Assembly: GCA_976226885.1 (NCBI GenBank)
Contig: OZ320314.1
Location: forward strand, 20,832,001-20,896,000
Direction: 5' to 3'
Source: Iphione sp. A-MEVVRFRX5
Lineage: Eukaryota
Length of the DNA: 64,000 bases
The first letter of the stretch is position 1. The number at the start of each line of letters is the position of its first letter. Below are positions 21,582-64,000 of this stretch, piece after piece. A program made the translations under genes and the position numbers. Below the pieces are notes generated by a model. The model saw nothing but the letters and a program-made list of their open reading frames with translations, was not told the origin of the DNA and made no database searches.

Positions 21582-21604
21582 ATGATCAACGACCTTATAA
21601 CCAG
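21582..21604 (+). CDS. Candidate alternative first coding exon MINDLIT(R), phase-2 donor to 45392
   Basis: gacATG context in a GC-rich patch; ATG ATC AAC GAC CTT ATA ACC AG|GTAAAG; joins in frame to G GGC GTG CCC at 45392. Confidence 0.5.
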
Positions 21605-23231
21605 GTAAAGGTGGAGTGCGGGGGGGGGGGCAGGTGTCGCCGGATCCTGGATGCACCTGTGACATGCCGAGGGCCCACCTGTCGCGTTCCTCAACATGCA
21701 CGATCTCCGATCCGTCCCCGCCGCCTTTCTTATACCGGCAAGGCATGAGGAGTTGTTACTTCTTTGTGAGGGTAAATTTGCACGAGGACCGTGAAAGGGG
21801 AGTGCACTTGGGCGAATCGTATGTAGTTGAGCTGGTGTATATTTGAATTTTGGGGGCAGAAACGCCCGGAACGGTTGGTGGGGTTCAGGAAGGATAGGCT
21901 GGCGGCCGTTACGACGAGAACGACAGCTTGGGATAAACATGATGCACTAAACATAACTTGATCTTAAAAGACAAGGCGTTGGTTGTATAAACAAAAGGAA
22001 TCGCGGAAGAGCTTTTGATCTCACAATTACAAGATCATTGTGGTAGAGGATAAGGACGTCTGAAATCAACCAGAATTCCGGCTGTCCAAGCTCGAGGGAA
22101 TTTCCACCAGAAAACAGTTTCCAATAACTTTTCCTAGTGGGGCTCATCTATTTCGTTGTGTAAAGTGAGCTTTGTTGCGAAGGTTACCAGCCTACAAAAA
22201 ATGATAATGTATAATATTAACTAGAATTACCTATAATTACTGTCATTATGTCAAGGCAAGAATGTGTATGTTTCATATGTACGGATGTTTTTAGGCTAGA
22301 AGTACACCGAATCGGTCAGGAAAGTATGTGTGATGTTTTTACCCGCGGATATTTATGAAAAAGGCAAAATTTATGCAGAATTCGCTCGTTAACAAAGACA
22401 TCTGTAGGAAATGAAGCGCAGTTTAGTTAGTTCTTTTCCATCGATAAGTGTATACATTCATATATACATAATAGATACAAATACACACATATATTATAAA
22501 CATAGATCGATGCACGTCAAACATGTATGATGTATATGGATGCATGTTTATCTGTTTTTTTTTCTGAATCGCGCAGATAATATTTGCACGGAGCACGTGC
22601 TCATGAGCACATAAAAAATAGGGCTTTTATTCTATTTTCAGAACTGAAGATGGAATGCCGTTATTGGTTTCTTTTTCCGTAGAATTGATTATCTGATTTA
22701 ACAAAGAAATTATGCATAAGAAAGATGCCGTGCAGATCCCCTTTGTCTGATGACTTCGCGACATGCTCGTCCTTCGTTAGTGGTCGGGCCTGATGCTTGA
22801 GGTGAACCCTGACTGGAGAGACAGGCGGTCAGTTCCTCTGATGCCCTTAACGACCAGTCGCGTTACACTCTTCCGTGATTTACACTATTTTCTCAGGACC
22901 TTTAACACATGTCTGCAGACCCTTAACTTTCACGGAGATTCGCACACCTCTCCTTTGTGGAAGCCGTTTTTTGGTGATCCCCGAACTCTTACTAGCATTT
23001 ACACCTGCCAGGTCTTCCCGTCAGGTCCTCATGAACAGAATCACGAAGGTCGCCATCTGCTTAAATACGTCTTAACTCGATGAAGAATTCATACCTACCG
23101 TGTAGAAATTATGTCATGCCATGCCCAGATACCTGTAATCTGAAAGGACGAAGGTGTATCTTCAGATGATTATGTGTACTCATTGCTTATGGTAGTAATT
23201 TAATTTCTCTCTCTCTCTCGTTTCGCTTCAG

Positions 23232-23285
23232 GTGATGCCGATGTGGTTTTAGGACAGTTGTCAGGCACAGTTGGAGGCCCCTGAG
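23232..23285 (+). other. Candidate non-coding or poison cassette exon (54 nt)
   Basis: Long pyrimidine tract then TTCAG| acceptor, and donor GAG|GTAATT. All three frames contain a stop. Confidence 0.35.
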
Positions 23286-24300
23286 GTAATTATTTTAAAC
23301 ATGCTGATATCAACATAACCGTCAAAGCAAAGTCTTAATGTTGTTGTGTCAGAAATATGACAGATTCTCTTGCCATCTGCGTGCACTAGTTTTGATGTAT
23401 TTAACTATATATGTAAAAAGATATGATTTATATTTAAAGGTAATGTAGGCCGTCCATATATACATATGCACGTCCGTACGTAAAATGAAAGTTGTCAGTA
23501 AGGCAGGTCAAAACAATTACAAAATTACAAAAAAATGCCTTTCTAGCCTGATATATCTCTGTCAGGTTAGGGTTTATGTAACAGGTAGAAAGAAGCGCCT
23601 CGTTCGGTTGGAAGGGGTAGGTAGAGGTCATGCACAGCGCGTCTGAAAGCAACTAGCGAAGGAAAAGTAGTAATTAAATATAAAAACCAAATGTCATGAT
23701 GCTGACTTGGTGCTCATTGTGGCTGAGACCTGTGTTCAGTGGTGGGTGATCGGGTCAGGTGTGCCGGGCACACACCCTCGGGCGGGGCCGCCCATTTGGA
23801 CAACTGTCGAACCACACTCGGGCGCACCGAGGCCCCCCCGAGGGGGGGGGACGCACACAGAATCAGTCTTACATTTACTCATAAGCAGCGAATCATGAAG
23901 AGATGCAACCCGGGTCCTTTTTTGAAATTTTATTCAACTTGGCAGTCCAATGGTGCCAGGACAATACATTGTACTACATAGACTGATGCCGAAGTGTACT
24001 TCTACAATGAATATATATATTATATATAGCAGCAAGAATCATTCGACCGTGTAACATACATGTTCGACAATAACAATATGTACATACATGTATGTACAAG
24101 ATTAGAGCCGTTTAGAATAGGTTATATGTCGGTTAGTCTGACGAATTGAGATGTTTGGATGACACATTAGAAGCGGTAATAATATGGGGATGGATCTTTC
24201 TTAGAACTTATACACCTTGCACAAGTAGAAGTTGCCATGTACAGTTAAGACAAACGCCTGTGATAGATGGGTGAACAAAATTAGTCTGTGTGGCTTCTAG

Positions 24301-24474
24301 AAGGGAGACACCGAAAGCTGAGACCAGGTGGTCAGGAAGAAAAGAGGAATGGCGCGGTCACTGGGAACATGAGTCCGCGCCGTGCTGCCGCGACCAGTCC
24401 CTGTATAAATGTCCATTTGACATGGAGGATGTCGCCACAGTTGTACTTCACCACCACCAGTTGGAATGTATGAG
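24301..24474 (+). CDS. Candidate phase 2-2 cassette exon, or first exon from ATG 24422 (MEDVATVVLHHHQLECM(R))
   Basis: Open frame of 174 nt from ttctag| to ATG AG|GTGACT, with a stop immediately inside the intron. The internal gacATGG start is in the same frame. Phase matches 45392. Confidence 0.4.
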
Positions 24475-32679: not shown

Positions 32680-32866
32680 TCCTTGGTAGGCTACCCGTCG
32701 CCATTTCTGTTCATATTGATGCAAATCGGCCTTGTGAGGGATTTAGTTTGGAGCGTTGGCTTGGTCGTCTACAAGTGGATAAATCGAAACCATGAAAAAT
32801 GAACACATGGAGGGAAGGTGGAGATAATTTACTTCATGGATCTTGTGTTTTGGCCTACCGTCACCT
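32680..32866. mobile_element. Possible Kolobok-like transposon end fragment
   Basis: Ends …GGCCTACCGTCACCT|TTAA (CCT plus TTAA flank). No complete left terminus seen. Confidence 0.25.
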
Positions 32867-33194: not shown

Positions 33195-33244
33195 ATGAAG
33201 AAGGAGTGGGTCTACAACCCCCCCCGCCCCCCCCCGTCTTCACG
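33195..33244 (+). CDS. Candidate alternative first coding exon MKKEWVYNPPRPPPSS(R), phase-2 donor to 45392
   Basis: Sixteen codons plus CG|GTAGGC, with an in-frame TAG immediately inside the intron; GC-rich context. The phase depends on two C homopolymers being correctly sequenced. Confidence 0.45.

Positions 33245-35356: not shown

Positions 35357-35358
<2 letters not shown>

Positions 35359-35441
<83 letters not shown>
35359..35441. repeat. (TC)n microsatellite, about 41 units
   Basis: Perfect dinucleotide run; explains the ERERER stretch of ORF 35348-35701. Confidence 0.98.
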
Positions 35442-35443
<2 letters not shown>

Positions 35444-39190: not shown

Positions 39191-39276
39191 ATGTCTGGAA
39201 CTCTGACCGTCCCCTGGAGCGCCTGGCTCCAGGGCGACGACACCCAGGATGCCTTAGAAGAAGCGCACCTGTACAG
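39191..39276 (+). CDS. Candidate alternative first coding exon MSGTLTVPWSAWLQGDDTQDALEEAHLY(R), phase-2 donor to 45392
   Basis: gcgATG start at the end of a GC-rich island of about 0.8 kb, high GC3, strong donor TAC AG|GTAAAT. The frame is open back to a TAG at 39143-39145, so it could instead be an internal exon from 39146 or 39149. Confidence 0.55.
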
Positions 39277-45839: not shown

Positions 45840-48800
45840 GTAAATATCTATTTTAAGTCTTCAGCCGTTTACTCAAAACATGTGGTTATATATAGGCACA
45901 TTTTCTTTAAACGTAACCATGCATCACAGAGCTTCTCACTTCATACCTTGAATTCTCTTTTCCGTGCATGAAAAGTGTCATTACATTATGTATACGCGTG
46001 CCGTGTCAAAGCGACTCGGAACAGAAGCCTGAGGCAGGTACTGCCACCGGAAGCAGTGACCTTTGCAGTGCTGCAACTAGTGTTGTAAAAAAAATCTGAT
46101 GGACTTGAAAAGAGAATACTTAATTCCTCTGACCCAGAAATAGACGAGACAACAAAAGAAATTAATGTTGGTGGGAATATCGAAGGGACGCTCAGTTTAA
46201 AATGAAAGCAAAGTGGATGGTTGTAAGAAACAATAAGACACCTAAATTTGCGAACCATAATGTGGATAGTATACATACCTGAAAAGTGTAGCTGCAAACT
46301 TCAAAGATCCTCAATAATGGCACATATTAGAAAGAAAAAACTTATGATAAAAGAAAAGAATTCTATTTGTTTCGATTGAGGTAGGGCAGTGTTTTGTGCA
46401 ACAACCGCGAAGGACACTTTTTGGAACAGGTACATGTATCCCTTGGTCATGTTTTTCATATAACGATACCTCAATTAAGATTTCCTGCATAATATTCATC
46501 TATCAGCGAGTGGATTCAGAATACATATAAAACTACAAGTTGTTGTAAAGTACACGGTATGAGTTTGAGCGAGAATAGCCGGAGTACATGTACATGGCTG
46601 CTGGTAGCATTATTGTGCAGTGGCTTTAAGTTGAGCATGCTCCTGTTGAAATGCACAGTCAGTCAACACGCAGCTATTATTGGATCTCTGATAATAGCGC
46701 CGTGCCCCAGCCAGGTCTAGGATTATATATAAGGACACGGGTCGACACACACGCTGTATATGTTTATATATGTACATGCATTTTGTCTAGTCTTGTTGAT
46801 AGCATGCTGAGTGTAGACACACCACATTTTTTTCTAGTTCCCCAATCACGAATACACCGTTCTTCTTGAGACCCTCGGTGTGTGAGCATGGCATGATGTA
46901 CCTATCAATCTTTTAACCAAAGGACTTGATCTAAACTATTTTACGCGTGAGCAGTACTGACAGTCAGATTTTTTTATTCACCAAAGCAGAGAACTGACAC
47001 AAAACTCAGCTCAAATGCACGATATACGCCACCGCCGCCGCCACCGCCCCCTAAAAATAGGGCATTGTGGGAGATGTGCTTGCTTACCCTTCAGGGGATT
47101 CCCCTCTATGGGAAGATTCGGGGAGGGAGCAGGGTTAACCCCAACATGCGAAGGTGTAACGCATGGCTGGGCTGGTAGTGTCCTACACTATCTTGACATT
47201 GGATGGCTGAAATCACGCGAACGCACGCTATGGTGTCTCGTGCCGGAGTTCACTGCCGTTTGGTCTGGGTCGAGACTGACCAAGCTGTACCTTGCGTAGG
47301 TCGCTAGGTTAGTCCGGTCGGTGTAATCGATAGGATAGGCCATTTTGTTCGTGTCCCTTTATTGATTCCTTGTGATAGCAGTATCGAAATGTTACTAGTA
47401 GTGCGTGACAAAGGACATCCTGTCAGGAACCATGTATTCTACTTTCATGTCACGATTTTCAAATGGGTCGGGCTCGCAAATGTGGACATTAAATACATTT
47501 AAGACTTTATAATATCTGTCCATCTTATGACGTGACAACTAAATTGTTTATTTTGCCAAGCAAGTGGTTAATATATTGCATACTCTGGTGCTTGAGAATT
47601 ATTAAGAGAACGAGTCAAAGACGGTGGTTGCATCGTAGTTATATAGTTCTATATAACTCCGCTGGTGATTGTTTTTACTGCACCTTGTGGCGCCACCTTG
47701 TGTTAAAGAGTGAACAGTCAGTCGCACGGGTGAGTCATGAATCGTCCCTTTGCATTACACAGCTGACAAAGAGCAACAGGTTGATTACAGAATGAGTTGA
47801 TGTGTTTAAAAGAAGTAGGCCATATGTTATAATTCGTTCATATATAATTGCACATCGGTGGAGTGATCGCTGGGAAAGAAAGGTCCTCAAGACGAGAGTT
47901 AATGCTTTAAATTCATATTCGGCAGCTCATGAAACATAAGAAGAACATGCTGATGCTGCTTACGACCCATGTGACATAAGAGGAAACTCGGTTATTTGCA
48001 CGGTTTTAGATGCATGTATGCTGTGCAACACTTGGTAGACTTCTAGATTGTTATTTATTGGTCTTTAACGGTCAGATTTCTGCCACTCAAAAGTCAGACT
48101 GCTGGCCATAGTCAGAAAGTAGCCATTTTCTGTGCAGAAGATTTCAATTACGATAACCGGGCGGTTTGAATGTAGTCAAACGCGTCAGTTGTCGACACAG
48201 CTAGTGTAGATTCGGCTTGGTAGGCGTACAACATGATGACAGTTGACTGGATGACGGTTGGTCGGCTCCCTCGCCCGTCGAGGATCGCGCGCGCGCGCGC
48301 CCAGACAGGTGCCTGTTCACGGCGGCAGGTGGTGCTAGATGATCCACCCTCACCCTTCTTACCTGAGTGGATATCAGGCGACAGGTGTGCCGGCAAGATT
48401 CGCCAAGCCTCACCGTCACCATCTTCACTCGCTGCCCCCCCCCCAGCGGTACTCGGCCACCCACCGCACCTTCATCTTTAATCTGCTCAGGCAACCCATC
48501 CCAAACCAACTAGGACTAGCCCCCCTTTTGCCGTCTGCTTATTTTAGTTCCCCCGTCCACAGCTTACATAATGTTTACCGGACTTATTTTTCTCCTGGGC
48601 AAACAACCCTCATGACACCTTTTAGTGACCAACGTAAAGTGGAATTGGCTGCGAGAAATGACAGCTTAATCTGGTTTATTGGAAAGATGGACAGTTTAGG
48701 TGGCGCGGTGCTGAGGCCGGCCATACCGGGAACTAACGTGATAAAATATTCACAAAACCATGGTTTTCTATGTAGGAAACAGGGATAGCAGACACATAGG

Positions 48801-51800
48801 ATCCTACTTATGCCTTACAGGACGTGACTGTGTATGAACGGGAATGACGCTTTTCTATTCCTGCTGATTAATCGGTTTCTAGAACCTGGCCGCTCCGCCT
48901 TTCGTTTTAACCCGGCGACCCCAAGACACCTTCTCACGCTCGTTGGTGTACATCGTAACAGCTGGTCCACCCCTTCCTCCCTTCCATTGTTCTCTGCTCC
49001 CCACCACCGCCCAGTCCCAGGCTATTCGAAACTTCGGATGCTCTCAGGTTTTTTCTCCCTTTCCACCGGGGCCTGTTGTACGAGCCTGTGACATCTTGCC
49101 ACGGCCTGTGGGAGATGAAAAGCTGTTTTTGTTCGAATAAGACAGTCAGTTATCTGTCGCACTGTTCTCGTAGTGGCCACTAATACTCTGGCAGGGAACA
49201 CCTGAACGTATGCACCTGTGCAGCTATGTGTTCCATATTAAACAAGTCGTATTGGCTTTCGCTATAGGGTAGCAGCAAACAGTGCCATTCTCAGGTGACA
49301 CTTTAGGAATGAATCACACTTATGATAACGGTATGCCCATGAAATGCACGTGTGTTTCGGACAGGGACATCTGCAGGGCTCGTACCAATAGTATTCGATT
49401 GCCTGTAGAATTTTCGCGAATATTCCTTCTACTATATGATCATGTGCACACGCAGTCGATATATCTTGTTCACATATAACCAGATTTTTTCATTGAACCA
49501 GCCATTGCAGGTACATTGTTGGAGGTTTTGACAACGTGATGAGTGTTGTACACTTATGTGGCCGTTTGTAATCTAACATCGCAAGAACCTACTCTTTCGT
49601 TGTGGGGTGCTAGTAATCTGATTCCATCTAATTTGGTTTATGCGAGGCCTATGTCGGTCCGTTCTGTAGATGAGAAGCATGTGACTTTCTTGAAATTCAC
49701 TGGCCTCTCAGCAGGTGTTGCGGCTACATGCTGTCAGGCCTTGTTTGCGGCGCCTTTGGTGAGGACATGTAGAGGCCGCCTGTAGGCTGCGAGAGGCCTA
49801 TTCTCACGTTACGCTGTGACGCCGCCTGGTGGCCACGGAGCGAACTGCAGTGGGCGAGGTTTAACTCGGGCTCCTGCTGTTCTTGTGCTTACTGTTTGAT
49901 GGAAGCTCCGAGCTCCAATCCCGGAACTATTGTCCGTGGTGCCTATGCCAGTTTTATTGGCTGCTGGGCGTCGCAGGACTTTTGGGTTGTTTGCCAGGTG
50001 TGAAAGGCCCATCCATCAGTGGGGATCAACACACTTGTAATGACAGGTGTGGCCCACGTTGATGTTTGAGTGATGGATGAACGCAGCCAGTTTGCGCCAT
50101 AGGTAACAGGTGGCGCCAGGGGCGTTAAAAAGTGTGAGGTCCAAGGCGCCCCATTACGCCAGCCCGCATTAGCAAAGAACAACACATGGACTGTCACGAC
50201 GAGAAAATATCTGGCTTACGAAAACTAGGGAGCATAGCTTCTACATAAAACCCCACACAGCCCCATTTCGATCGACTGAGAGTAGAAGAAAGTTTTTCAC
50301 TGCCACCTCGCGGCCATCTCTTTATTACTTTGAGTTGTCATGACGGCCGTGGAATTAAGTGCCAGGTGTTCGTTCTGTTGTCATTTTTTGGGGAATGATT
50401 TGGCACACAGAAGGGTTTCTATGGGCTCTTCCCTCACACACAGAAGGCTAGTTGCTTGCCAATGGGGCTATCTAAGTTGACCCACCAGAGGAATCTGACG
50501 CCGTTATTTTTTTTAACCAAGCGAAAAGGTTCTCTCTTTTTTGTGCTTTTACCGGCCTGTAAGGCGACAAGGTAGCCTACTCTGTGTTTTATTGCATTTT
50601 TATATTCACAAAGTGCTTATCGGCACTTTATTATACTGTGAACAAACATGGAGTATCCGACGAGGCGCTGTCGTTTAGAATAGTATATGAACGCCTTGAA
50701 GACAGGACATACCTCGCTCTTGGAGTAGCTAGTCTCGGAGGCTTTGACATGAAAAGAAGAGGACGCTTGGGCCAGTTGTCAAGTTACCTGTCATTAAAGC
50801 CAACACCAATCTTGGGGTGGTCCGTTTCAGAAGACAAATGATTTTGGGCCACGAACATTGGCTTCTTCGGGGTAGTTTATTTAATGTGACAGACTCGGGT
50901 GTCCGCTCCTTATTAATTGCTCTAGTAACTGCCTTTACAAGCTTCTCGTCTCCCTATCAGCAAACGTGTCCAAATGGCCGCACCTTTTTCACCACCCCAT
51001 CACTCTTCATCCTCTATCTGTCGCCGTTTCCCGCACCAACCACTACTGAACCCCTCTCAGCAAGTCACTCCTTCCACTTTACCACCGAGCCCTGTGAAGT
51101 GGTGATTTTTTTCATTAGATTCACCGGGGCGGCCCCTTCGCAGCGGTCCTACGTCGGAACTAAAAGATGCTTTCTTTTTTTGGCAGTAGTGGCTGTAGGC
51201 CGCTGGGACAGGTGCATGTAGGACTGTGTACACAAGGAGACGGTGGGCGTGGCCTGGGGCCACCGCCCTCCATGCCGCTCATTACGTGGACGGGGCTAGT
51301 ATGACGAAGGCTACCCGTCCCTTACCCCTAGGAAGACTGCTATAGAAGCTTAGAAACCATCTTAGTTTATGATGCCCCATATTTGCAGATGAACACTCTG
51401 AACTGCTTTTGTCCTTTTGTAGCTAGTTAATCGATTGCAAATGTCGGGACAGAATGTATCATTCCTATGTAGAACGTAATGTACAGATGAAACACATGCC
51501 GGGAACGGGATTCTGCCAGTATGTACATGTTTGGGAATCTTTAGTGAAGTAACGGCCAGAGAGAAGATCTCTCCCACAGCTGGCGGTGCGGAGGAAGGGG
51601 AAGAGGTAGAGGTAGGGGGCAGAGGGGGCACTGACATAACAACTGGCAGTGACGAGTAGCCCTCAGGGTGACAGCCGGTAAATGACATCTAACGGGAACA
51701 GTTGCCAACCTTTGGGAGGTAACTATTCTGGGGAGAGGTAGGCCGAGTGAGAGCCTTCCAACACCCCTTACTTCCGCACCGTCACCAGCTCGTCCATAAC

Positions 51801-51810
51801 GACGTCAAGT

Positions 51811-51995
51811 NNNNNNNNNNNNNNNNNNNNNNNNNNNNNNNNNNNNNNNNNNNNNNNNNNNNNNNNNNNNNNNNNNNNNNNNNNNNNNNNNNNNNNNNNN
51901 NNNNNNNNNNNNNNNNNNNNNNNNNNNNNNNNNNNNNNNNNNNNNNNNNNNNNNNNNNNNNNNNNNNNNNNNNNNNNNNNNNNNNNNNNNNNNNN
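51811..51995. other. Assembly gap (N run)
   Basis: Run of 185 N. Confidence 0.99.
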
Positions 51996-53304
51996 TTCAC
52001 CTGCCCTACACGGACATTGGCCGCAATGGCCTGCCCCTCCTTTCCGTCCTGTGTTATGTTCTTACCGGGCAGAACAGTGAAACCCCATACTAACAGCGAG
52101 GCCACACATAGCTCCACCGCTACAGCAGATGTCGCGTTGTCTGTGTCAGTCAACTCCCCGCCTTGCTGACCACCTAATGCAAAAGGTACACGCTGACATA
52201 TTTCTATTTCTATACGTGTGTGGTCAGATTCCCGTATATATGGATAAGGCTAATGCACACACTTATGAACTGCGTCCCAGACAAAGCCTGTGAGAAGAAC
52301 AGAAGGGTTGACTATGACGCACGTCAGATCATGTACAATGTATCATTGTAACAGTTCCGACAAACTCCCCGTCAAGCCATTCGCTTTGATTTTTTTTCTC
52401 GTGTGCCTCACAAATCTAGTTTGTTTTGAAATTCTTTGTATATGTTTCCCTGGAGATTACACATACGTTTATGTATTCATATGTACATGTACATAACTGG
52501 CATGACAGATGATGTATGGAGCATGGTCGGTGAAAATGAGCAACCATATACGACCATCCCTGTATACCTGCCAAGTAGATTATAACCAGATTTAATAGGG
52601 CCATTTTGCCCAGGATGTCGTAAATTCATAAAAACGTCGTAACCAGATGGTCCTCTTTGGCGTTGTCATGATTGGCGGAGGTAATAACAATTTCCGCACG
52701 TCACAGGTTCTGCAAGCCGTTTACCCTCATGATGCGGATGCACATATGCATGTATTTATGTAGGTATATATAGACAAATACCCACAGACAGAAAGTTTCG
52801 TCCTCGCTGGCGTATTCATAGATACCAGCCAAGTCAATAGGCGTCGCACGCTCCATACACCCTTCCCCTACCGTCGTTTGCCCTCATAGCTCATACTGCC
52901 AATGCCCTCCCACTCTGCACCTTCCCCGAGGCTAACCTCTACCCGGCATTTACTCCCCCGCCTCTTGTACCGTATGTACTGTCCCCATTTTCTCACTGGC
53001 GTTTCGTATAGCTGCCGCCTCGCGGCGCCACTGTGCTAGTCTTCATCTTGGCGTTGCGATATCGGCACGCATGCTCAGCTCCTGTCAGCATGCGTTAACA
53101 CACGCATGTTTGACCAGTACTCCTCAGTGTCGGTTCATCCGTCGCGCAGAAACTAACGCGCACACAAGCAGCCCGATGGCAAGAGCACATGTGATGTGTT
53201 TGCATATATGAAGACAGCAACGTCATCGCCGTCTATGTTGTATTGTCGACAAAGCCTGTGCAGTGGTGGGAGCTAGTGGAGAAATAGGCAGGACAAAAGG
53301 ATGG

Positions 53305-53400
53305 TAGGGGGCTGGCGGCGGCGGCCATGTATGGTTATATAAGCCCTGCCTTGTACCCGGCGGGAGGCGGACGTGGAGTGAGGAGTCGTCTCACCTGCCA
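53305..53400 (+). promoter_or_regulatory. Candidate internal TATA promoter
   Basis: TATATAA at 53336-53342 between GC-rich runs. Downstream donors are GTG|GTACGG at 53589 (phase 0 from ATG 53488) and CAG|GTTAGT at 53838. Confidence 0.35.
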
Positions 53401-54586
53401 GTCACCCTCGGCGCGGCCAGCAGGCAGCAGGCAGGACGGAGTCTGAACGTCCCGTCCGAGCAGGAGGAGGAGCGGATCTACATCTGCATGATACCATTGT
53501 CACTGCATGCTTCAAAGACCGACCGGTTCACTGGAGACCACCTTATAACAACATCGTTGACAACCTTCAGCCGTCCAATGGCAGGCGTGGTACGGACAAA
53601 CTCTTGCAGGAATTGTCTGACGTTGAACGTCGTTCGACCCAGCGCTGGTTAATGCCCAATGCTGCTACGCAAGGAATCGGACATATACTACTCAACATGC
53701 GTCACCGCTATCTGAATCTTGACGGTCTATCGGTTGGAACTATCTGTTGTTGGAAAAGTACAATTCATTGGCACTATAGAGTGTGATCGCCCCGATCTCT
53801 AGTCGAGGGACTTGCGGAACTTATACCCTTAAAAACAGGTTAGTAATACCTACGGCTGACGTGCTGCTGTCTTGTATATTGAAACTTCATCCAGACATTA
53901 TACACAGGTATACATATATCCTTATTTTAGTTGAAGTCTGCATAGTACTAGCATTGTCAGCGAGTTTAAAAGCAGTCAGTGTTTGAACACGTTCAACTGT
54001 TGGCCTGAATCTTACATGCACATGTATATCGCCTTATTTGCGGTACACTATTCACCCTTCCTTAACTGCATCGTCAGTAGCACCAGTTTGAAGTGGTGTT
54101 CTTTGTGTGGAGGTTACCTAGATATACACAGTTTATGTGCGAGAGGTTATACCTAGGCGGTCCCTTAATACATGTACCGTCGAACCTCGTTATCCGGAGA
54201 CCCTCTGTTTCATTGTACATGTAGGCGGAGAGAGGCACTATGTCTTGTAGGGTTGCCTAGTGCCTTTCTGCACACCTCTTGTGTCTGTTTACACGATTAC
54301 TGTGGCGGTGTGCCGCACTGTATCGCGTCGTTTCATGATGTGTGTGTATTCGGCTTAGGGTTTTTGTTGGATCGTGAATGTAGCGATGTCGACTAGGCCC
54401 TTGAGCCCCTCGCTACAAGCTGCGTCGGTGGACGAGGGTCGGGCGGGAGAGGGGCGTGCGTTTGGCCGCCTCCCAGGTGGACAATAGCCGGGTTAACACC
54501 TTCCATTAGAAGCAGGCGTATTCGTAGGTGATACCGGAGCAGCCGGACGGTCCTCTATTCTGTGAAATTATATCACCGGGAGAAAG

Positions 54587-54877
54587 ATGGCAGCCGGCGA
54601 CGAATCCCTGGGTCGCCATGGGGACCGCTGGTCATGTTTACTCACCGACCTGACCTTTTACTTTCCTCCGCACGTCAGATTACCATCCCCCCCCCCGACA
54701 GGTCAGCGCACCTTTCGCGACATGCCTTGTTGTCCCCCCCCCGAGCCTGATGACCACCTCAGCCCCCGAACAACTGCTGAACCCGCTGATGACGCTGACT
54801 CGCGCAAGCTTGACCGACTTCAGATGTCCTCACCCACGTTTTTACCTGTCTCTCGTTGTTTTTTCAACATCCCTTAA
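54587..54877 (+). other. CpG-rich 96-aa ORF MAAGDESLGRHG…, status unclear
   Basis: Good start context aagATGG and coding-like composition, but the only decent donor (CAG|GTCAGC, 54701) is phase 1 as sequenced. Confidence 0.2.
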
Positions 54878-55811
54878 ACGAAGAGAAGAGCAAGTCATCG
54901 CATAATCCATTAAAACACTGGCCCAAGACTAGAAGAGTGAGCTGCTTCTTGCAGTTCTCATGCAAAACGCGAAGCCGCACCCCCTCCCACTTTTAGTACC
55001 AGCACAGTTAGATATATGAGATAGAAACGTGTAATTATTGGACTGCGCATTTGCAAATTCAGTTAAACTGAACTAGTTTAACACTGCACACAGATGCGAA
55101 CGTTGTGTAGATATCAACGTTTACGAGAATCATCACCTAAAATATATGACTGAAATTATATACAAAGACTTTGCTGCACTTGCTTTACAAGAAACATCAT
55201 GATCATCGTATAGGGCTGTTGAGAACTTGGCCGGCTTGGGAATACAGCGTACGCTCAGCGGTGGTCATGATTTCAGTTTGGCTGACGAGAGGTGGGGCTT
55301 GTGGACGAAGGCACAACCAGCCGACACGTCAGCCTATAATTTGTCGGCCAGTTTATTGCCGTGTTAACTGAGTTAATGCCGTTATTGAGGCAGACGTCTA
55401 TCATCGACTGTTCGGCCGTTGTTGTTGATATGGTCGGTGGAGGGAGTGGCCAGTACTGTCATCCGATCCTTTGTCGCCGACCATCCATCACGTGACTGTG
55501 AACGTCCCCCTCGTCCGGTCGGTCCGTCCCTGGCGACGACAGACCAACACTTCCCCATACCTCCGGGGCCAGGCGGATGCGATCCCCGAGTGTACATCTG
55601 GACATGTGTCAGATGTATCTTGATTTATCAGGCCGGTCGCCCAACTCCCCCCGACCGGCTTAAATCCCTCCCGAAGAGTCAGAATCGTCCGTTGTCAAAA
55701 ACCCCAGCTGTGAATTCACCCCCGGGTATACGGTAGATGTGTCGCGGAAGCACCTGGCAGGGAATCTGGGTGACAAGATAGGAAACCTTGGGTCACAAAT
55801 GGCGCCTCCGA

Positions 55812-55949
55812 ATGCTGTTTGACCCCAGTGTCAGTCAATCGGCTGTTTTAGACGCCCCTGACAAACTCAGAACAGGCGAAGACGAAGGTCCAGCCTTAAA
55901 AAGGCGCTGTCCCTCCGGTCTTCCCCCGTTCGCCCCAGTAGTTGCAGTC
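55812..55949 (+). CDS. Candidate alternative first coding exon MLFDPSVSQSAVLDAPDKLRTGEDEGPALKRRCPSGLPPFAPVVAV, phase-0 donor to 63165
   Basis: Forty-six open codons ending GTC|GTAGGT; phase matches the 63165 acceptor. The exonic side of the donor is non-consensus. Confidence 0.3.
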
Positions 55950-58840
55950 GTAGGTGTTTTTTCCCATCCGTGGGAATGAAAAGGTATAGAAAAGGGTGAT
56001 GACGTAATAGTAGGATGTCCAAGCAAAAGGGAAAGTGCCGATGGACAGTCCGAGACAAAAGGGCCGTTTGTGTTTCTTCCAAACACAAGCATTCCATAGA
56101 AAGTATCTTTATGTCATTCTTGTCCTTCCATTCCACCTTTTTTTCCCGTTTCCACACATCTCAAAGAGTTATTTGTTCAGTTGTATAGCTTTTAATGAGT
56201 AATTTATTCTGTTGTGTATTTTTTTCATGAGTTATTGCTCTGCTGTGAATTTTAGTTCCGTGGGTGATCAGGGATAACAAGAGGGGCCGTGTACATGGAA
56301 TTACCCGTTCCGTGAGAGTGTGGGAAAGTCTGTCGAAACAATAAAATTCCTCCGACGCTTACCGTACGGGGAGAAACTCAAGCCAGACACATGGAATACC
56401 AGCCTTAAGTTCGAACTGTCAGGGCAAACCAGGGTCGCATTATTACGAGTGCACTAGCTGAATGTGTTAAAATTTCTGGTTAGAGCTTATCCAATGTGAA
56501 CCCTGATTAGAGACTGACTCAAACACTCCTGAGAGAAAAATAGCAGGTGTGTCAAGCTTAATTACAGGTGCCTCAGATCGAGCCTGTCGAACCACCTGTC
56601 CAGCTCCTGGACAACATGGCCACCTTCTATCTCTCTTCATCTGCTGTAGGATGCGTCGGTCCAACTAACGTCGAAGTATGAAAATAAACGTCGAAGCATA
56701 TAGTGTACACTTGAAAACATGAGCTTTGAATGGGAGGGTAGAATACAAAGCTGAGAAAGGACCCTGGATGTACTGGTGTACAGGTGAGTGTACAGACGAT
56801 ACGAGCCTGCGTTAGTAGGCCACGCATTGTCAGCACGGTCACAGCCAATTACGTCTCACGTGTCTTTGCCAAGTTATAACTCAACCATGTTAAGGGACTA
56901 ATTCGAATCCCATATCGGGTTGAAGGGGGGAGGGGGCGTTTTTACACCCGGGGCGTGAGAATCCATCCACAAAAAGAGACCCCCAAGGCAGCAGTGGGAG
57001 ACACCCATGTCCGCAGGTGGTGTGATTAAGACGCCCTAACCCACCTTGTGTCCCACGGGGTGCACTATAGAGAGTATTAACTCCATGTGAAATCATTCGC
57101 GTTTGGCATCTTCAATACACGAAGATTGGCTTCGCATATCGTAGCAGTCACATTGATATATTTGGTTAAAACCGATTAAGGATCGGCACAATGCTGCAGA
57201 AGATGAATTTCTGGATATTGTTAATGTGCAGCACGGATTTGTCGGAGGGTTCAATAATGCTTTGTACACACACACGCACACACACAATCATTATTACAAG
57301 TGATCGGCCTCTCCCCGTAATATCAAACTGCTTTGTACATGTGCAATAACATTTCTTATGAAGAATCCATCAATTAGTCAATTCAAAATAGAGCATTGGT
57401 CGGGGGGGGCAGTTGCTTTACATTAGTCTATTTCCCTTTGTCTCTCTCTACTCATAGCGGTCTTCCTATTGCAGAAGAATCGCTTCTCGTCGAGTAAAGA
57501 GTAAAGAGAGAGTAAAGAGTAAAGTACACAACCTGCAGAGTGTAACGTTTTTTCCCCTACCACTTCAACTACATGTGAAAAAAAAACCCACAAAGGGTCG
57601 TGGTTCATGTGGGTCTCTTATGAGACCAGTTCCTTCAAGGGCCGTGTTTTACGTACGCTCCCATCAAAGCAGCTCTTCTAATGGCAGTGGTCCGTTGGGC
57701 GTGGCATCATAAACTTCACTAAACTGGTCCCCCATACCTTTTGAAAGGATGTTATCAGTCCTTGGCTGCCAGTAATAATGAGCTCCAGAGTGGGAAGATT
57801 ATCTCCATGGAGAATCCTAGAAGAGAAGGCACCATGCCCTCGAGCCATTCAGGTTTCCTGGATGGTCATCAGGCAGGCCAGTTTGAAAGGCTGAGTAGGG
57901 AAGCTGTTGGCCGAAGTGTTGGCGGGCGGTTACTTTGATGTGGAGAGGTTTCTGATGACCGTGCCGTGCCTATTAGCCGCCGCCGCCGCTGATGACCACC
58001 GGTCCTCACGCACCTGATGCGGGCCCGCCGCATGCCTATTACAGAACCCGGAGGCTCTCTCGCCCCGAGGCGCCAACCGCATCTGGCCGAGACGCTTAAT
58101 ACATGTATATACTGTCGTTGTTACATGGACCTCAGAATTAACTCGAGGCTGACTTGCCAAATATACTTCTCCCGGCTTGTCTATATACCAGCACGTACCG
58201 ACGGAATCCACGTTTACATCTACATTGCGAAAGGTAAGATAGGAGCTTACATGCATAAAGCATGAGCCAGGCTTACGTGGAAGACATGTTACGCTGAACT
58301 TAATAGAATGCACGCGCCATATTTCATCACGTGTCACAGAGCATTTAAGGTTTAATGACGTTGTCATAAAGAACGGGAGCGTCTTGGAAATACCGAATTA
58401 GCCCTGTTACTGACGCCTTAATGACCTGCCTCACAACAGACCCCAGGCCCACATTGAAGGCGCTTTCATAGCAAGGTCACATGGCCAATAATGTAGACAG
58501 GGCGGACTTGGAAGGCAGCCTGACAGGCACCATAGTAGTGGGGACGGTGGCATGGGAAGGCCCCAAGCCTGCAGTGATTCACACTGTGCAGGACCTCGAG
58601 TTATTATCTCCGACTCCCTAGCTTGGTGAGTCTCCTCCTCCCCTCTGACCCGCTTCCTTGGTTACACAGGCAGTTGGCCGACAGTGGACTGTCGCTCCGG
58701 TGATACCTGTGTTATCAATCACGCTTGCTGGCGTAGGGACATATTGCATTATAGAAAGTTGGGTAAAGGGCACGCCCTTCGCCAACCTGCGGGGGGAGGG
58801 GGAGCTTTTCTGGGGTGACGGTGGGGCCCCCACCTGCTGT

Positions 58841-58987
58841 ATGCTAGTCCGGCGGGGACGACGTCTTCGCCGCTGGGCGACTGCAGTGACCCCTAGAGGA
58901 TACCTGGAGGAGCGGGCGTCGTACCGAGGGAGGGGGGTGGCAGGGGTGGAGGCGGGAGAGAGATGTCCGCCGCCGGGGATGGGGCAG
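58841..58987 (+). CDS. Candidate first coding exon, frame B (MLVRRGRRLRRW…CPPPGMGQ), proximal donor, phase 0
   Basis: Forty-nine open codons ending CAG|GTGAGG; the start context is weak. Confidence 0.3.
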
Positions 58988-59010
58988 GTGAGGCCCCGCC
59001 GGGACCGCAG
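58963..59010 (+). CDS. Candidate first coding exon, frame A (MSAAGDGAGEAPPGPQ), distal donor, phase 0 to 63165
   Basis: gagATG start, 16 codons, strong donor CAG|GTGAGG, inside a very GC-rich island. Confidence 0.5.
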
Positions 59011-61526
59011 GTGAGGCGGGTCATGCCAGCCGCCCCACCCCCGCGTTCAGGCTCCAGCGTCGAGGGTGGAGAAGGAAACCCCGAGTAGCCCAACCTTGCG
59101 AGCTGCAGTCGCGGTCATTCACGGAGAAACGAGTCAGAAGTCTCCTCGTTGCCGCTGACCCGGCGCTGACAGCGGCTGAAGGGTCAGACTTTCAGCACGT
59201 TAAACGTTCAGTGTCTTGTCTACGTGTCACGAAGGGCTTGGGCTGGGGCCCCGGGGGGGAAATGATTGATGAGCATGATTTTACCCTGCGCTATAATGGC
59301 CATAGCGGGTGGAATGTCTGGGTTGAAAATATTCCATTCAGACTTTTTAGCCATGGCGACCGGAAGACTCCGAGTGGGCAGAATATATCGATGGTGTTAC
59401 CTGTACATAAACGTCAGGGACCAAACAATGAATCAGTCAACACTAACACCTTTTCTTTCCCTCCTCACTTCCATGGACCGTGTGATTCCATTAACCAGCG
59501 ACTGCATATAGGCAACTTTCTTGTTAAGCCGGCCCCCATCTTCTCATTAGGCCAATTAAGCTGGTCCGGCGGTGTTCTCTTCTGACTCATTGACTCCCTT
59601 GTTGTATATCAGAAAGGGCCTGTGACGAGATAAAGACGGGCTAATCCTTAAATTCTCTTATGTTTAAACGGTCAGAAAGACAACAAGAAGCACTTACAGT
59701 GTTCCCGGGAAATTTCGAATTTGAACTGTGTTATGAAATTTCCATACATTAAGTTTCATTCTATTTAAGTTTCTTTTATACCGGTCAATAAAATTGAATG
59801 TGATTCACAATCAGCACGATGTTCAATTATGCACATCCCTTTAGGAAAAAAAGTACCGTTAACATTTATGCAACAATTAAATGGTGAAATCGCTTACTGG
59901 TCATACTCGCGTGAAGAATGCTAAATTCTACTGCTAACAATTTTTTGAAAGGCAAAAAAAAGGTGACTTTCCTCCGAACAGCCTATTTCTGATGGCCTAG
60001 TTGACCCCCTACCTTTTAGGTGAAACCAGTACCTGATACACCTGTACACATGACTGTTTTTTTCCATCTGAAAGCCAACAGGTGCACCGACCATATCAGG
60101 AACGCGATATATCGTCCCCTCTTAAATTCCATATCTAGACTTTCGTCTCTTCAAGTGCTGAAGGGCAAGCCGACCTAATAGTTTTGATTGCAGGCGTCTT
60201 TTAAGAGGAGGGGAGGTGTTTTCTGGTTATATGTAGTTATAAATCTAACATAAAGCCGTCGGGGGCACCTCGGAGAATGGAAGAGGCTGGTTGGTGTTGA
60301 CAAACATGCCGCCAGGTGCCCAATCGCCTGACCATTTGTTTGCTGGATCGACAGGTGCAGCTGGCGAGGAAGGATTGAACACAGTCGGGAAGGGCGACAG
60401 GGAAAGGGCAGAGTTCCTCCTTTACCGCTCGTCTAAGTTGGTTCTATTCGCATAATCGTTCGAGCAATATATATCACAGGATTGTCGAATAGTGATACAT
60501 GTACATGCACACACTTAAGATGGTGTAGTACAAGGTGGTATTGTCTCACAGTCTCTGTAACTTTCCAACAAGCCAGGCGCCTCTTTATCTCATACCTGTA
60601 ACCCCACTTTTTCTGTCAAGTAATATTTGCTTTATCTTATCTCTAGCCGTGATAATTGAAATCCCGCGCCACAGAAGCTCTGGAACAGCACCATGCAGTA
60701 GGAATGATAGTTTATATTTCACTTTTGATCTCGGTCTAAGCCACCGAAGCTACCTCTTGTAATCTACTTCAGAGCCTTACCTATCATGGGGGTAGTTTTC
60801 TCAGCATACTGTGAGTATGCCCATACTGCTCAACCCTCGGTCTCTGCCGCCCTCCCCCCCACACACACACCCAGCTGACCGCTGCAGCTCGCACGTATCT
60901 CCGATAGTCTGCATTCCTGTCTGAGACCACTTCAAAGTTGACTGTTATCAGCGGGTGCCGCCCGCTGCTCAGAGACCGTGCGGCAGCTCAGCCTTTCACG
61001 TGCAGCAGGTGGATACAAACTGGCTGCCTATCTATCCAGCCGTATTTACTGACATAGTGAAAATGAATGTTAAAGTTTATCTTTGATTTTTAGAAGTACA
61101 ACACTAGTTCAGAAGCAAAAGAACTTTCATCATTGAAAGCAGTTGGACGATTATAGTTCGAAAAACGTACATGATTAGCATACTAATTAATAAAGCTCAT
61201 TAAGATAGCGTCCATTGATTTAGTAGTAGTGGGAATGACCCTGTGACCCGGCCGAGTTGGTAATGGTGGTTTTCAAGTGGTTGACGACGGCGAGTGATAG
61301 AGCGCAGGCTCGGTTGGTTGCTCCCCCCCCCCCGCCGCCCGCTATCAACATCAGCCTTCGCGCCATTAGGGGCAGAGCGTTACCGGGGGCTGCTGTGTCA
61401 CCTGCCCCCAGTGTGCGCAGGGGCGCTGCAGCAGCGGGTTGTCAGTTGAAAAGGGGGACAGTCTCCGGACGGGGAGAGATGCGACTAGAGCATCCATGTG
61501 GTCTGCCTGCCACTTGAAGCGTGGTG

Positions 61527-61591
61527 GATAAAAGGAGCCACCAGCAGACGCTTTAGTATTGAGGAGCGCTGCACGTGAAGCTGGCCACGTG
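61527..61591 (+). promoter_or_regulatory. Candidate promoter elements for the MGMQ exon: TATA-like GATAAAA and two CACGTG E-boxes
   Basis: GATAAAA at 61527-61533; CACGTGA at 61572 and 61586; GC-rich island upstream (61250-61520). Confidence 0.3.
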
Positions 61592-61751
61592 AAACGCCTG
61601 TCAATATTTGCATCCTGGGCCCCTGGCTATTGACGAGGAAGGCACGAGCTGACAGCCACTACAGAGTCAATGTAACCCAAGTAGAAAGAGGGCAGGGTTT
61701 CCCCAAGCACAGGCCAGGGACTCACCTTCACTGTCACACCTGTCCTCTACG

Positions 61752-61763
61752 ATGGGCATGCAG
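61752..61763 (+). CDS. Candidate alternative first coding exon MGMQ, phase-0 donor to 63165
   Basis: acgATGG start context and a perfect consensus donor CAG|GTAAGT, 1.4 kb upstream of the phase-0 acceptor; gives MGMQ-FEIIEEG…. Confidence 0.65.
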
Positions 61764-62195
61764 GTAAGTGCCGCTAGCTCGGCGGGATCGTGTGGGCCAG
61801 CCCAAACATACACACAGACATGCATCTCCAACAGACTCCGGAGAAGGCAGCAGGTGTGTTCAGCTGCTTCACCAAGAATAGCCTACAGTTCCCTCGGCTC
61901 TAGAGAAGCGTTGCTGGTCTACTCTCTCCCAATACCCCGTCCTCGTTATTTCATCTGATCGTAAGAACTCACTGAAAAAGGACATGTCAGGGACAGGTCA
62001 GCACTGGGAAGAATGTGAGGGAAAACGTGGACGTTGTGACTGAATACTCTTCTAACTTAAGCTTGAAATGATCGGAAAGCATTTACATTCTGCTCATATT
62101 GACCGAGAACATTGGTCTACGTTGTCCATAGACTACTCTAAAACATGTGATATGTATTGACTAGAGTGCAAGTTTTCTACTTCTATTATACGGAC

Positions 62196-62223
62196 TTTCG
62201 TCCATTTTTGTGGACCTCTTCAG
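62196..62223 (-). other. Degenerate hammerhead-ribozyme-like core
   Basis: Minus strand reads CTGAAGA-G-GTCCA-CAAAAA-TGGAC-GAAA-GTC with a perfect 5-bp stem II; no stem I partner found. Confidence 0.3.
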
Positions 62224-63164
62224 GCTTTTGAAGAGCACTGTTGGGAATTCCCGATACACAATTGATAGCCTGTTATTCGCTTTCTAGTAGCCCTCAGCTT
62301 GGATTAGAATACGTTCAGATGCGGTCAACTGTGACCCTGGGGAGTATGTGCATTTACCTCACGTGTTTTGTTTAAGAAGTGACCGCTTTGGCGCGAAAGA
62401 CCTTTGCCATCTTCCACCTGACTGAATGAGTCCACCACCATTCTCTTGTGTTGTCCAATTACGGACCTCCTGTGGTCCTAGGCCACACATAGCGGTATTT
62501 ATTGAAAGGCTATGTCAGGTGGGCGCTTTATTCAGTACCTAGGGGGCACAGGTAAACTGCCACTTTGTAGCTGCGCCAGGTCTTAAGCCCATGAACAAAA
62601 GAGCAAGGTCGATGAGGCCGACTGAGACAATCCCTGCCAGCGACCCGGGCCAGAGCTTATAGGGCGTCGATGTAATGAAACCTGGCTCATACAAGGCCAC
62701 AAGAGTGGTTGGTTTTCAGCTGAAGGGTGGGAAGTATCCCTGTTAAATCCCCTCCTCATGCGGGAAACCTTTTGTGAATGAAAGAAGTAGCGATCTTAGA
62801 AGTGATAGCCCAACTCGGAACGGTGGGAAAGTCTCGGGGCAAGCACAGAAGCACAATTAGTATATCTCTTCAATGGAGTTCAAAAAGGACTTTTGTCATG
62901 TTCCTCGCGCAAATTTGGGTAACTATGTTTTCGAGGACGGTTTGAATAATGATTGTGAATGTTTTCCCTGGGATAATTCACCTAAACTGAAGTGACAATT
63001 CATTAATTCATTGAGTAAAAAGTGTCTAATAATACATTTTAGTTTCCCCTCCATGGAAATTCTCCAGGACACAGATAAATTATCAGTCATAATGTTATTG
63101 GATATTGTTAATATGTTGATGCATAAACATGTGCTCATGCCTTTCCTTCTTTTTACCCTTACAG

Positions 63165-64000
63165 TTTGAGATCATCGAGGAGGGCCTCCACATGAAGCTC
63201 GAGCTGAAGAACATCAAGCAGCAGTTCCTGTCGCTGCTTGAGAACTACGAGGCCTACGAGCAGCGGCCGGCGCTCCTGCCCAGCATGAGGGCGTCGTCGG
63301 GCGTGCCCCTCACCGAGAAGGCTATCCCCAGTCCCCGCGCCCGGGTGAGGGCGCTCTACGACGCGCGCCGGGCCAGGATCCAGGCCCGGCGTACCATGTC
63401 GTCGGCCTCTGCACCCCTCTCGGCTGCGTCTGAAACGCCGCGTCGGTCGCTGCGGCGGTCCAGCTTCCCTCATAACAATAACAACGACGACAAGGAGAAC
63501 GATAAGGAGAACGCGTGTGCGCGAAAGCATCGGCAGTGCAAGCAGCACGAGAACATCATCTCCAGCGAAGAGAAGTATGGTGGGAAGGTCACTACGTCGA
63601 CGCCCTTCTGCAAGCCCCATAAACACTGCGCCTGCCACCCGCGGACGGCGCCCAGCCAGCTGCTGACGCCCATCGCCGAGGAGGGGAGGCGGCGGGTGCG
63701 GCGCCGCGACCCGACCAGCGCGGGGTCGAGCTCGGGCGCCGCCTCGCCGACCCTCAGCGAGCTGGAGGGAGAGTACGTCATGCTGCGGTCGCCCTCGCAG
63801 GAGGGGATCGTGTCGATGGAGGTGGACAGCTACACCGACGGGCCCTCCCCGGCCCCGGCCCCGCCGCCCCAGCCGCTCTACCAGAGCCGGCAGTCGGAGA
63901 GCAAGCTGGCTGCTGACCAGACGTCCATCTGGATCAACACCAACGACAATCTCGGACTCTATTGCCCGCAGCTGCTGCAGGACGAGTCGTCCAACAAAGA
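63165..64000 (+). CDS. Large coding exon (partial, runs off the window) of the same gene: FEIIEEGLHMKLELKNIKQQFLSLLENYEAYEQ… then a disordered Ser/Pro/Arg-rich region with EYVML and PLYQ tyrosine motifs
   Basis: Long pyrimidine tract then ttacag| acceptor; 278 uninterrupted codons with very high GC3; in frame with the phase-0 donor at 45839. Missing from the ORF track because there is no stop in the window. Confidence 0.93.

What the first reader, a model, noticed from the sequence alone, without database searches (positions are those of the whole stretch)
21582..64000. Two-tier array of phase-matched alternative first exons feeding one gene
Seen: GC-rich patches upstream of the 45392 acceptor (phase 2) contain ATG-open frame-donor units that end in phase 2 (21582, 24422, 33195, 39191). 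Patches between 45839 and the 63165 acceptor (phase 0) contain units that end in phase 0 (55812, 58841/58963, 61752, weakly 53488). The phase switches where the downstream acceptor's phase switches, and two units have a stop immediately inside the intron. Inference: a multi-promoter gene with about 7-9 interchangeable N-termini, giving long isoforms with the His/Gln-rich exon and short isoforms without it. Established: such architectures occur in signalling genes such as PDE4 and several Rho GEF/GAP genes, but I cannot assign this gene. Caveat: GT sites are common, a phase match occurs by chance 1 time in 3, and I also saw mismatched candidates.
Basis: partly seen in the sequence, partly recalled or inferred. 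Interest (0 to 1): 0.72.

Follow-up and report, generated by a model that had tools for sequence, protein, structure and literature searches.

The report
Worm gene with probable internal start exons
This is the front part of an unnamed gene found only in annelid worms; two or three of the nine proposed alternative start exons have support from related worms, the rest look like chance, and no RNA data could be found to settle it.

Summary
The stop just inside the intron follows automatically from a phase-2 GTRA or GTAG donor.

The gene is not from Branchiostoma. Every homologue found is annelid (Capitella, Paralvinella, Dimorphilus), and there is no Pfam domain.

- **Shown:** exon A (45392-45839, conserved acceptor, conserved ATG at 45429) joins in frame to a terminal 895-codon exon B (63165 onward). 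This structure is conserved in three related worms.
- **Best-supported start exon:** the 17.3-kb intron holds three conserved non-coding modules. The one at 61185-61763 ends in a 12-base ATG mini-exon with a consensus phase-0 donor. The same arrangement recurs in two of three relatives.
- **Weaker candidates:** the module at 58712-59011 is a weaker second case. The unit at 39191 has only a faint echo in one relative.
- **Unsupported:** 21582, 24422, 33195, 53488 and 55812 have no support.

No RNA run was listed, so no junction or start site could be tested. Verdict: an ordinary multi-promoter architecture, probably real for one to three starts rather than seven to nine.

The parts
45392..45839 (+). 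Exon A: internal coding exon, 448 bases, His/Ser/Gln-rich, phase 2 in and phase 0 out
   Evidence: The acceptor and donor sit at the same places in three related worms. Exon lengths are 448/322/352/280, all 1 mod 3. Its last residues match the Capitella and Dimorphilus gene models just before the exon B motif.
45429..45431 (+). Probable start codon of the long isoform
   Evidence: The ATG has A at -3 and G at +4 and is conserved in four species. Downstream differences by codon position are 12/14/27 of 72 (coding pattern). Upstream they are 12/20/21 of 36 (no such pattern).
45840..63164 (+). Intron between exon A and exon B
   Evidence: Donor atg|GTAAAT and acceptor ttacag|. The same junction is present in four species.
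51811..51995 (.). Assembly gap inside the intron
   Evidence: Run of N. It touches no exon or unit. Continuity was not testable.
63165..64000 (+). Start of exon B; the open frame runs to 65849 beyond the window (895 codons, then a stop)
   Evidence: There are 33 annelid homologues, most covering the whole exon, and those read share its C-terminal motif.
61185..61249 (+). Conserved module 2, upstream part: a 26-base core plus a direct repeat of TGACCC spaced by 2
   Evidence: The core is found 1.86-2.3 kb upstream of exon B in all four species. The repeat is in three species and is unique in the window.
61592..61751 (+). Conserved module 2, downstream blocks: AATATTTG at 61603 and CACCTG at 61737; possible core promoter and leader
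   Evidence: The blocks are shared by the window, L010 and L012.
61752..61763 (+). 12-base ATG mini-exon (MGMQ) with donor cag|GTAAGT at 61764, phase 0: the best-supported alternative first exon
   Evidence: Donor score 8.7, the best in the tested window stretch. Counterparts with ATG, purine at -3, G at +4, a final CAG and a phase-0 donor lie in L010 (donor 8197) and L012 (donor 8445). None is found in the third relative.
58712..58772 (+). Conserved module 1 core
   Evidence: 84% identity over 62 bases to L010 5084-5143 (E 2.6e-10). Found 4.4-5.2 kb upstream of exon B in all four species.
58841..59010 (+). Units ATG 58841 to donor 58988 and ATG 58963 to donor 59011 (both cag|GTGAGG, phase 0): possible second alternative first exon
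   Evidence: L010 has ATG 5283 to donor 5343 in phase 0 with a near-identical donor. The GT aligned with 58988 is kept in four species, but there the ATG-open unit is in phase 1 in all four.
54533..54657 (+). Third conserved intronic module, with no donor unit attached
   Evidence: A 23-base core is identical in three relatives, 8.3-10.4 kb upstream of exon B. A profile match in the window has E 5e-5.
38956..38983 (+). Short match to a relative, upstream of the 39191 unit
   Evidence: 24 of 28 bases match 5.5 kb upstream of exon A in the L012 species (E 0.2). The 15-base core is unique in the window.
39191..39276 (+). Unit with donor cag|GTAAAT at 39277, phase 2: the only tier-1 candidate with any echo
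   Evidence: The relative has an ATG unit ending acag|GTAAAG in phase 2, 370 bases after the shared element. Donor scores are only 4.9 and 3.7. It is absent from the third relative.
21582..21604 (+). Unit without support
   Evidence: Donor score 3.7. No conserved sequence nearby.
24422..24474 (+). Unit without support
   Evidence: Donor gag|GTGACT, score 3.5. No conservation.
33195..33244 (+). Unit without support
   Evidence: Donor acg|GTAGGC, score 2.2. No conservation.
53488..53589 (+). Unit without support
   Evidence: The phase-0 GTs scored reach only 1.1.
55812..55949 (+). Unit without support
   Evidence: The phase-0 GTs scored are below 0.

Best explanation
The stretch is the 5' part of a + strand gene of an annelid-only family without known domains.

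**Shown.** An internal coding exon A (45392-45839), with a conserved acceptor and a conserved ATG at 45429, is joined in frame to a terminal exon B of 895 codons (63165 to 65849, beyond the window). The intron between them is about 17.3 kb.

**Inferred.**
- The intron carries three conserved cis-regulatory modules.
- The module nearest exon B (61185-61763) ends in a 12-base ATG mini-exon with a consensus phase-0 donor. It most likely works as an internal promoter plus alternative first exon, giving an isoform of 4 + 895 residues that lacks the His/Gln-rich exon A.
- The module at 58712-59011 is either a second such start (16 + 895 residues) or an enhancer.
- At least one exon must lie upstream of exon A. 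It is probably untranslated and is not identified.
- The other five units are chance ATG-GT pairs.

So there are one to three alternative starts, not seven to nine, and phase matching is not the evidence for them.
For: **Gene and junction**
- Exon B has 33-35 homologues; all those that carry a source name are annelid.
- The Capitella and Dimorphilus models carry the exon A end motif directly before the exon B motif.
- Exon A orthologues lie on the same contigs in three relatives. They keep the same acceptor, and their lengths are all 1 mod 3.

**Module 2**
- The core is collinear in four species.
- The TGACCC repeat, the AATATTTG block and the CACCTG box are in three species.
- ATG mini-ORFs of 4, 4 (or 9) and 8 codons all end in CAG|GT in phase 0. 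They lie 453-593 bases after the core in the window, L010 and L012.
- Background: strong donors occur at 0.25 per kb per strand, and 0.345 of them carry a phase-0 ATG unit. That gives about 0.07 per 800 bases, so two of three relatives has p of about 0.01.

**Module 1**
- E 2.6e-10 to L010, and the module is present in four species.
- The donor at 59011 has a near-identical phase-0 counterpart in L010.

**Control and exclusions**
- The third module has no donor unit in any species.
- The modules showed no other copies in the own-genome search.
- They match no Rfam family and show no RNA fold signal.
Against: - No RNA run was listed, so no start site or junction has been seen.
- The third relative has both modules but no matching ATG-donor unit.
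- In module 1, the GT conserved in all four species carries its ATG unit in phase 1, which does not fit exon B. The phase-0 donor is seen only in the window and L010.
- The motifs in the modules (nuclear-receptor half-sites, forkhead-like, GATA-like, named from my own knowledge) suit enhancers as well as promoters.
- Upstream-ATG depletion in the putative leader is not significant: 2 observed against 3.6 expected.
- The donor matrix was written from memory and is rough. The real donor at 45840 scores only 2.7.
Confidence: 0.5

Rival explanations
1. The gene has one promoter. The conserved intronic modules are enhancers or silencers, and the ATG-donor units beside them are chance or by-products of GC-rich, AG/GT-rich regulatory sequence. 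Every transcript runs from an upstream exon through exon A to exon B.
For: - The exon A end motif is kept from Dimorphilus and Capitella to this species, so the A+B form is the ancestral one.
- The modules are built of transcription-factor-like motifs.
- One relative keeps both modules without the units.
- The module 1 units disagree in phase with exon B at the conserved GT.
Against: - Three species place a Kozak-like ATG, a short open frame ending in CAG and a strong donor in phase 0 at the same spot after module 2. The chance of this is about 0.01.
- The third conserved module has no such unit.
Confidence: 0.33
2. One reading: seven to nine interchangeable coding first exons in two tiers, each phase-matched to its acceptor.
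For: The units exist with the stated phases. The frame before the ATG of exon A is open in four species, and its only length change is 6 bases.
Against: - The phase tallies are flat.
- Five units have weak donors and no conservation.
- The pre-ATG stretch has no codon-position signature.
- The intronic stop is automatic for phase-2 donors.
Confidence: 0.05
3. The donors at modules 1 and 2 belong to a separate transcript nested in the intron, such as a non-coding RNA or a small gene that does not join exon B.
For: The module 1 conserved GT has a phase-1 ATG unit in all four species, which does not fit exon B.
Against: No conserved coding block lies between the modules and exon B in translated comparisons with three relatives. 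There is no Rfam match.
Confidence: 0.08

Closest known systems
Multi-promoter genes with alternative first exons joined to common exons
   Same: A large common downstream exon. Candidate first exons each have their own upstream conserved module. Long and short forms would differ by an N-terminal region.
   Different: Only one to three starts have any support. No transcript evidence exists. The gene is unrelated to PDE4 or Rho regulators. The candidate first exons encode only 4-16 residues.
Annelid hypothetical proteins CAPTEDRAFT_207223 (Capitella teleta), LSH36_12g11012 (Paralvinella palmiformis) and DgyrCDS12014 (Dimorphilus gyrociliatus)
   Same: They share the exon B motifs from the first residues to the C-terminus. 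The short exon in front of exon B ends in a conserved motif.
   Different: They have 31-42% identity over the aligned part, which covers 33-100% of exon B. Exon A is far longer here (149 codons, against 93-117 in the near relatives and about 23 residues in Dimorphilus). None of these proteins has a known function, and no paper mentions them.
Conserved non-coding elements in introns of regulated genes
   Same: Three short blocks are kept in order and at similar distance from exon B in four species, while the rest of the intron is unalignable.
   Different: Two of the three are followed within 250-600 bases by strong splice donors with in-phase ATGs, which plain enhancers need not have.

Membership tests
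Gene with alternative promoters and mutually exclusive first exons | Two or more separate transcription start sites | not testable with these tools
   No RNA run was listed for this DNA, so read laying could not be used. No CAGE data are on hand.
Gene with alternative promoters and mutually exclusive first exons | Splice junctions from each first exon to the common acceptor | not testable with these tools
   For the same reason.
Gene with alternative promoters and mutually exclusive first exons | Donor phase of coding first exons fits the acceptor more often than chance | tested here: not met
   Units by phase 0/1/2: 45/35/34 and 8/3/3 upstream of exon A, 7/7/4 in the intron.
Gene with alternative promoters and mutually exclusive first exons | First exons conserved in position, ATG and phase in related species | tested here: inconclusive
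   Met for 61752 in three of four species, and for 58963 in two of four. The echo for 39191 is weak (two of three species). Not met for 21582, 24422, 33195, 53488 and 55812.
Annelid family of CAPTEDRAFT_207223 / LSH36_12g11012 / DgyrCDS12014 | Shared motifs along the large exon, including the first residues after the acceptor and the C-terminal end | tested here: met
   E-values from 0 to 1e-27. The 16-sequence alignment has 46 invariant columns.
Annelid family of CAPTEDRAFT_207223 / LSH36_12g11012 / DgyrCDS12014 | Short upstream exon ending in the Y-L/F-D/E-T-x-x-x-M motif, joined in phase 0 | tested here: met
   Window, three relatives, Capitella and Dimorphilus.
Known protein domain families (Pfam) | A match above the curated cut-off | tested here: not met
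   No family reached its cut-off for exon A or the two halves of exon B. Atlas look-alikes scored 0.83 or less.
   All homologues that carry a name are annelid. Earlier notes on this genome also call it a worm.

The most novel reading that the evidence does not exclude
An annelid-restricted, domain-less gene keeps two internal promoters fused to micro first exons across several worm genera. These produce isoforms without the fast-evolving His/Gln-rich N-terminal exon. Each promoter sits behind a module with nuclear-receptor-type TGACCC repeats and forkhead-like sites, which hints at hormone-type or stage-specific switching between long and short forms.
Probability: 0.35. Interest if true: 0.35.

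Novelty: new member of a known kind. Interest (0 to 1): 0.25.

Why it matters
If real, this is an ordinary case of alternative promoter use in an unstudied lineage-specific gene. Its value is practical. It gives a corrected gene model: exon A, exon B, a likely start codon and one to three candidate internal starts. It also gives three conserved regulatory modules that could be tested in a worm with few functional annotations. Finally, it shows that counting ATG-to-GT units by phase cannot by itself reveal first exons.

Tried and rejected
- **CpG islands as promoter marks.** Overall CpG observed/expected is 0.80 and does not pick out the units.
- **Repeats.** The units and modules do not overlap the interspersed repeats found in the genome.
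- **Structured RNA.** No Rfam match and no fold signal at the modules.
- **Upstream coding exon by translated comparison with two relatives.** Nothing conserved within 10 kb upstream of their exon A. One apparent hit was not real.
- **More exon A orthologues.** The full profile search returned only the sequence already in the profile. The word search gave one hit.
- **Family assignment.** The Pfam scan, the Atlas search, two word searches and a paper search all left the family unnamed.
- **Upstream-ATG depletion in the putative leader.** Not significant.
- **Myristoylation signal in the mini-exon.** MG is followed by residues that do not fit the usual rule, and one relative has MA. Rejected by inspection.
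- **Mini-exon as an internal exon fed by module 1.** A fitting acceptor exists in the window but not in L010. Dropped.
- **Paralvinella gene model as evidence for a short isoform.** Its first exon, 353 bases upstream of exon B, may simply be the exon A counterpart.
- **Joined protein.** The spliced protein was not searched as one joined sequence. The exons were searched apart, by reference.
- It was rerun from stored files.
Full report
**Observation.**
- The two acceptors are real-looking and have the stated phases. At ttccag|G (45392), one base completes a codon. At ttacag|TTT (63165), the phase is 0.
- The frame from 63165 stays open for 895 codons to a stop at 65850, beyond the window. Exon B is therefore a large terminal exon.

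**Gap.** The N run 51811-51995 lies inside the intron between the two exons.
- No exon or proposed unit touches it, and the nearest unit (53488) is about 1.5 kb away, so no frame depends on it.
- The intron length of 17,325 bases is therefore an estimate. The same intron is about 16.2, 19.0 and 20.6 kb in three related worms.
- A conserved element that I first missed in the window lies at 54533-54657, not in the gap.

**Is the phase pattern more than chance? No.**
- I scored donors with a rough matrix written from memory. It is only a coarse filter: the real donor at 45840 scores just 2.7.
- At score >=4 the split is 8/3/3 in 21000-45391 and 7/7/4 in the intron.
- The phase-0 GTs of 53488 and 55812 that I scored have poor donors.
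- The stop immediately inside the intron is forced. In phase 2, the codon after the split one begins with the T of GT, so GTAA, GTGA and GTAG always read as stops.

**What the gene is.**
- Exon B finds 33 proteins, and 35 with a profile. Every hit that carries a name is annelid: Capitella teleta, Paralvinella palmiformis, Dimorphilus gyrociliatus. The window is therefore from an annelid, not Branchiostoma. Earlier notes on this genome also speak of a worm.
- No Pfam family reaches its cut-off, Atlas look-alikes are weak, and no paper mentions the named homologues.
- Most database entries are open-frame calls on genomic DNA that begin in the intron just before the conserved acceptor. They therefore say nothing about N-termini.
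- The Capitella and Dimorphilus gene models carry the end motif of exon A directly in front of the exon B motif. This supports the 45839-to-63165 junction.
- I searched the exons apart, by reference. The joined protein was not searched.

**Related loci.** I assembled the orthologous region for three related worms.
- L015 (reverse) plus L010: exon B is 70% identical.
- L018, L017, L016 and L012, all from one contig: 66% identical.
- L014 plus L013, from one contig: 66% identical.
- Exon A is present in all three, with the acceptor and donor at the same places. Lengths are 322, 352 and 280 bases against 448 here, all 1 mod 3. The His/Gln-rich middle is an expansion in this species.
- Because the acceptor is conserved, exon A is not a first exon, and at least one exon lies upstream.

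**Is the upstream exon coding?**
- The 37 bases between the acceptor and the ATG at 45429 (43 in one relative) are open in the gene's frame in all four species. That is the only frame open in all four, and the one length change is 6 bases. This fits coding.
- Differences by codon position there are 12/20/21 of 36. In the 72 bases after the ATG they are 12/14/27 of 72, the usual coding pattern.
- The ATG with A at -3 and G at +4 is kept in all four species.
- I judge it somewhat more likely than not that 45429 is the start codon and the upstream exon is untranslated. In that case phase has no meaning for tier 1.

**Tier 2: module 2.** Outside the exons the introns are unalignable except for three short blocks. 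These blocks keep their order and their distance from exon B. Module 2 is the best case.
- A 26-base core at 61185 lies 1.86-2.3 kb upstream of exon B in all four species.
- It is followed by a TGACCC direct repeat spaced by 2 (61236-61249, unique in the window), an AATATTTG block (61603) and a CACCTG box (61737). Each of these is shared by three species.
- Then comes ATG GGC ATG CAG | GTAAGT at 61752-61769. This is the best-scoring donor found in the tested window stretch (1-63164).
- L010 has a 4-codon counterpart (9 codons from an earlier in-frame ATG) with donor at 8197. L012 has an 8-codon counterpart with donor at 8445.
- Each counterpart has a purine at -3 and G at +4, ends in CAG, has a strong donor and is in phase 0.
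- Across all four sequences, strong donors occur at 0.25 per kb per strand, and 0.345 of them have a phase-0 ATG unit. Such a unit within 800 bases of the core in two of three relatives has p of about 0.01.
- The third relative has the core but no such unit.

**Tier 2: module 1.**
- The core 58712-58772 matches L010 at 84% over 62 bases (E 2.6e-10). It is found 4.4-5.2 kb upstream of exon B in all four species.
- Further shared blocks extend over about 330 bases: TGACCC, a CCAAT-containing block that this species has lost, CAG|GTG and GGGTCA.
- The window has two cag|GTGAGG donors, at 58988 and 59011. ATG 58841 reaches the first in phase 0, and ATG 58963 reaches the second in phase 0.
- L010 has ATG 5283 to donor 5343 in phase 0, with a near-identical donor.
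- The GT that aligns in all four species is the one at 58988, and there the ATG-open unit is in phase 1 in all four. That does not fit exon B.
- Module 1 may therefore be a start exon, perhaps non-coding, or an enhancer.

**Tier 2: module 3.** Module 3 (54533-54657) has a 23-base core identical in three relatives but no donor unit in any species. It serves as an internal control. The modules show no other copies in the own-genome search, match no Rfam family and show no fold signal.

**Tier 1.**
- The closest relative's contig ends 690 bases upstream of exon A, so only two relatives could be compared.
- Translated and nucleotide comparisons found no conserved block in their 10 kb upstream.
- The one exception is 38956-38983, which matches one relative at 24 of 28 bases (E 0.2) at a similar distance from exon A (6.4 against 5.5 kb).
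- In both species this match is followed by an ATG unit ending acag|GTAAA in phase 2: 39191-39276 here, 370 bases after the element in the relative. The donors are weak and the peptides are unrelated. The other relative lacks it. This is a lead, not a result.
- Nothing supports 21582, 24422 or 33195.

**Mechanism.** The most likely picture is as follows.
- A long form starts at or upstream of 45429 and includes the variable His/Gln-rich exon A.
- At least one short form is driven from module 2. It starts with four residues and continues into exon B.
- Module 1 is possibly a further start.
- The steps that are shown are the two exons, their junction and the conservation of the modules and units. 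The promoter function and the use of the donors are inferred.

**Comparison and novelty.** The architecture is of the familiar multi-promoter kind. The gene itself belongs to an unnamed annelid family. This is a new member of a known kind, with modest interest.

Noticed in passing
window 5751-5924: A second assembly gap (174 N), outside the finding.
   Followed up: no
window 54172-54213: A 40-base element with at least 33 copies at 91-100% identity across many chromosomes of this genome. It is probably the end of a small mobile element.
   Followed up: partly
window 30721-30911, 35972-36043, 21000-21066: Further interspersed repeats with many copies at 70-93% identity elsewhere in the genome. 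None overlaps a proposed unit.
   Followed up: partly
window 35359-35449: A (TC)n microsatellite of about 45 copies.
   Followed up: no
window 28211-28245: An ATG unit with donor aag|GTGAGC (score 6.8) in phase 2. No conservation was seen.
   Followed up: partly
window 45500-45720 (middle of exon A): The His/Gln/Arg-rich middle of exon A is about 40-55 codons longer here than in three related worms, while both ends are nearly identical. It is a fast-evolving low-complexity insert.
   Followed up: partly
window 58988 and its aligned sites in L010, L012 and L013: The GT conserved in all four species inside module 1 has an ATG-open unit in phase 1 in every species, which fits neither exon B nor any exon I could find. 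This is unexplained.
   Followed up: partly
window 48936-49022: A weak collinear translated match (E 0.012) to the intron of one relative, about 3-4 kb after exon A. At DNA level only short motifs are shared.
   Followed up: partly
P0037 (Paralvinella LSH36_12g11007): A second, shorter family member on the same Paralvinella contig as the main homologue, suggesting a local paralogue in that species.
   Followed up: no
L006 (exon B, window 63165 to 65849): The family has strongly conserved short motifs in an otherwise disordered-looking protein: a CKEHG..GGPCIF block, a TDCDSSYLSEC block, a DxYDYV block and a C-terminal TLGHF. No function is known.
   Followed up: partly
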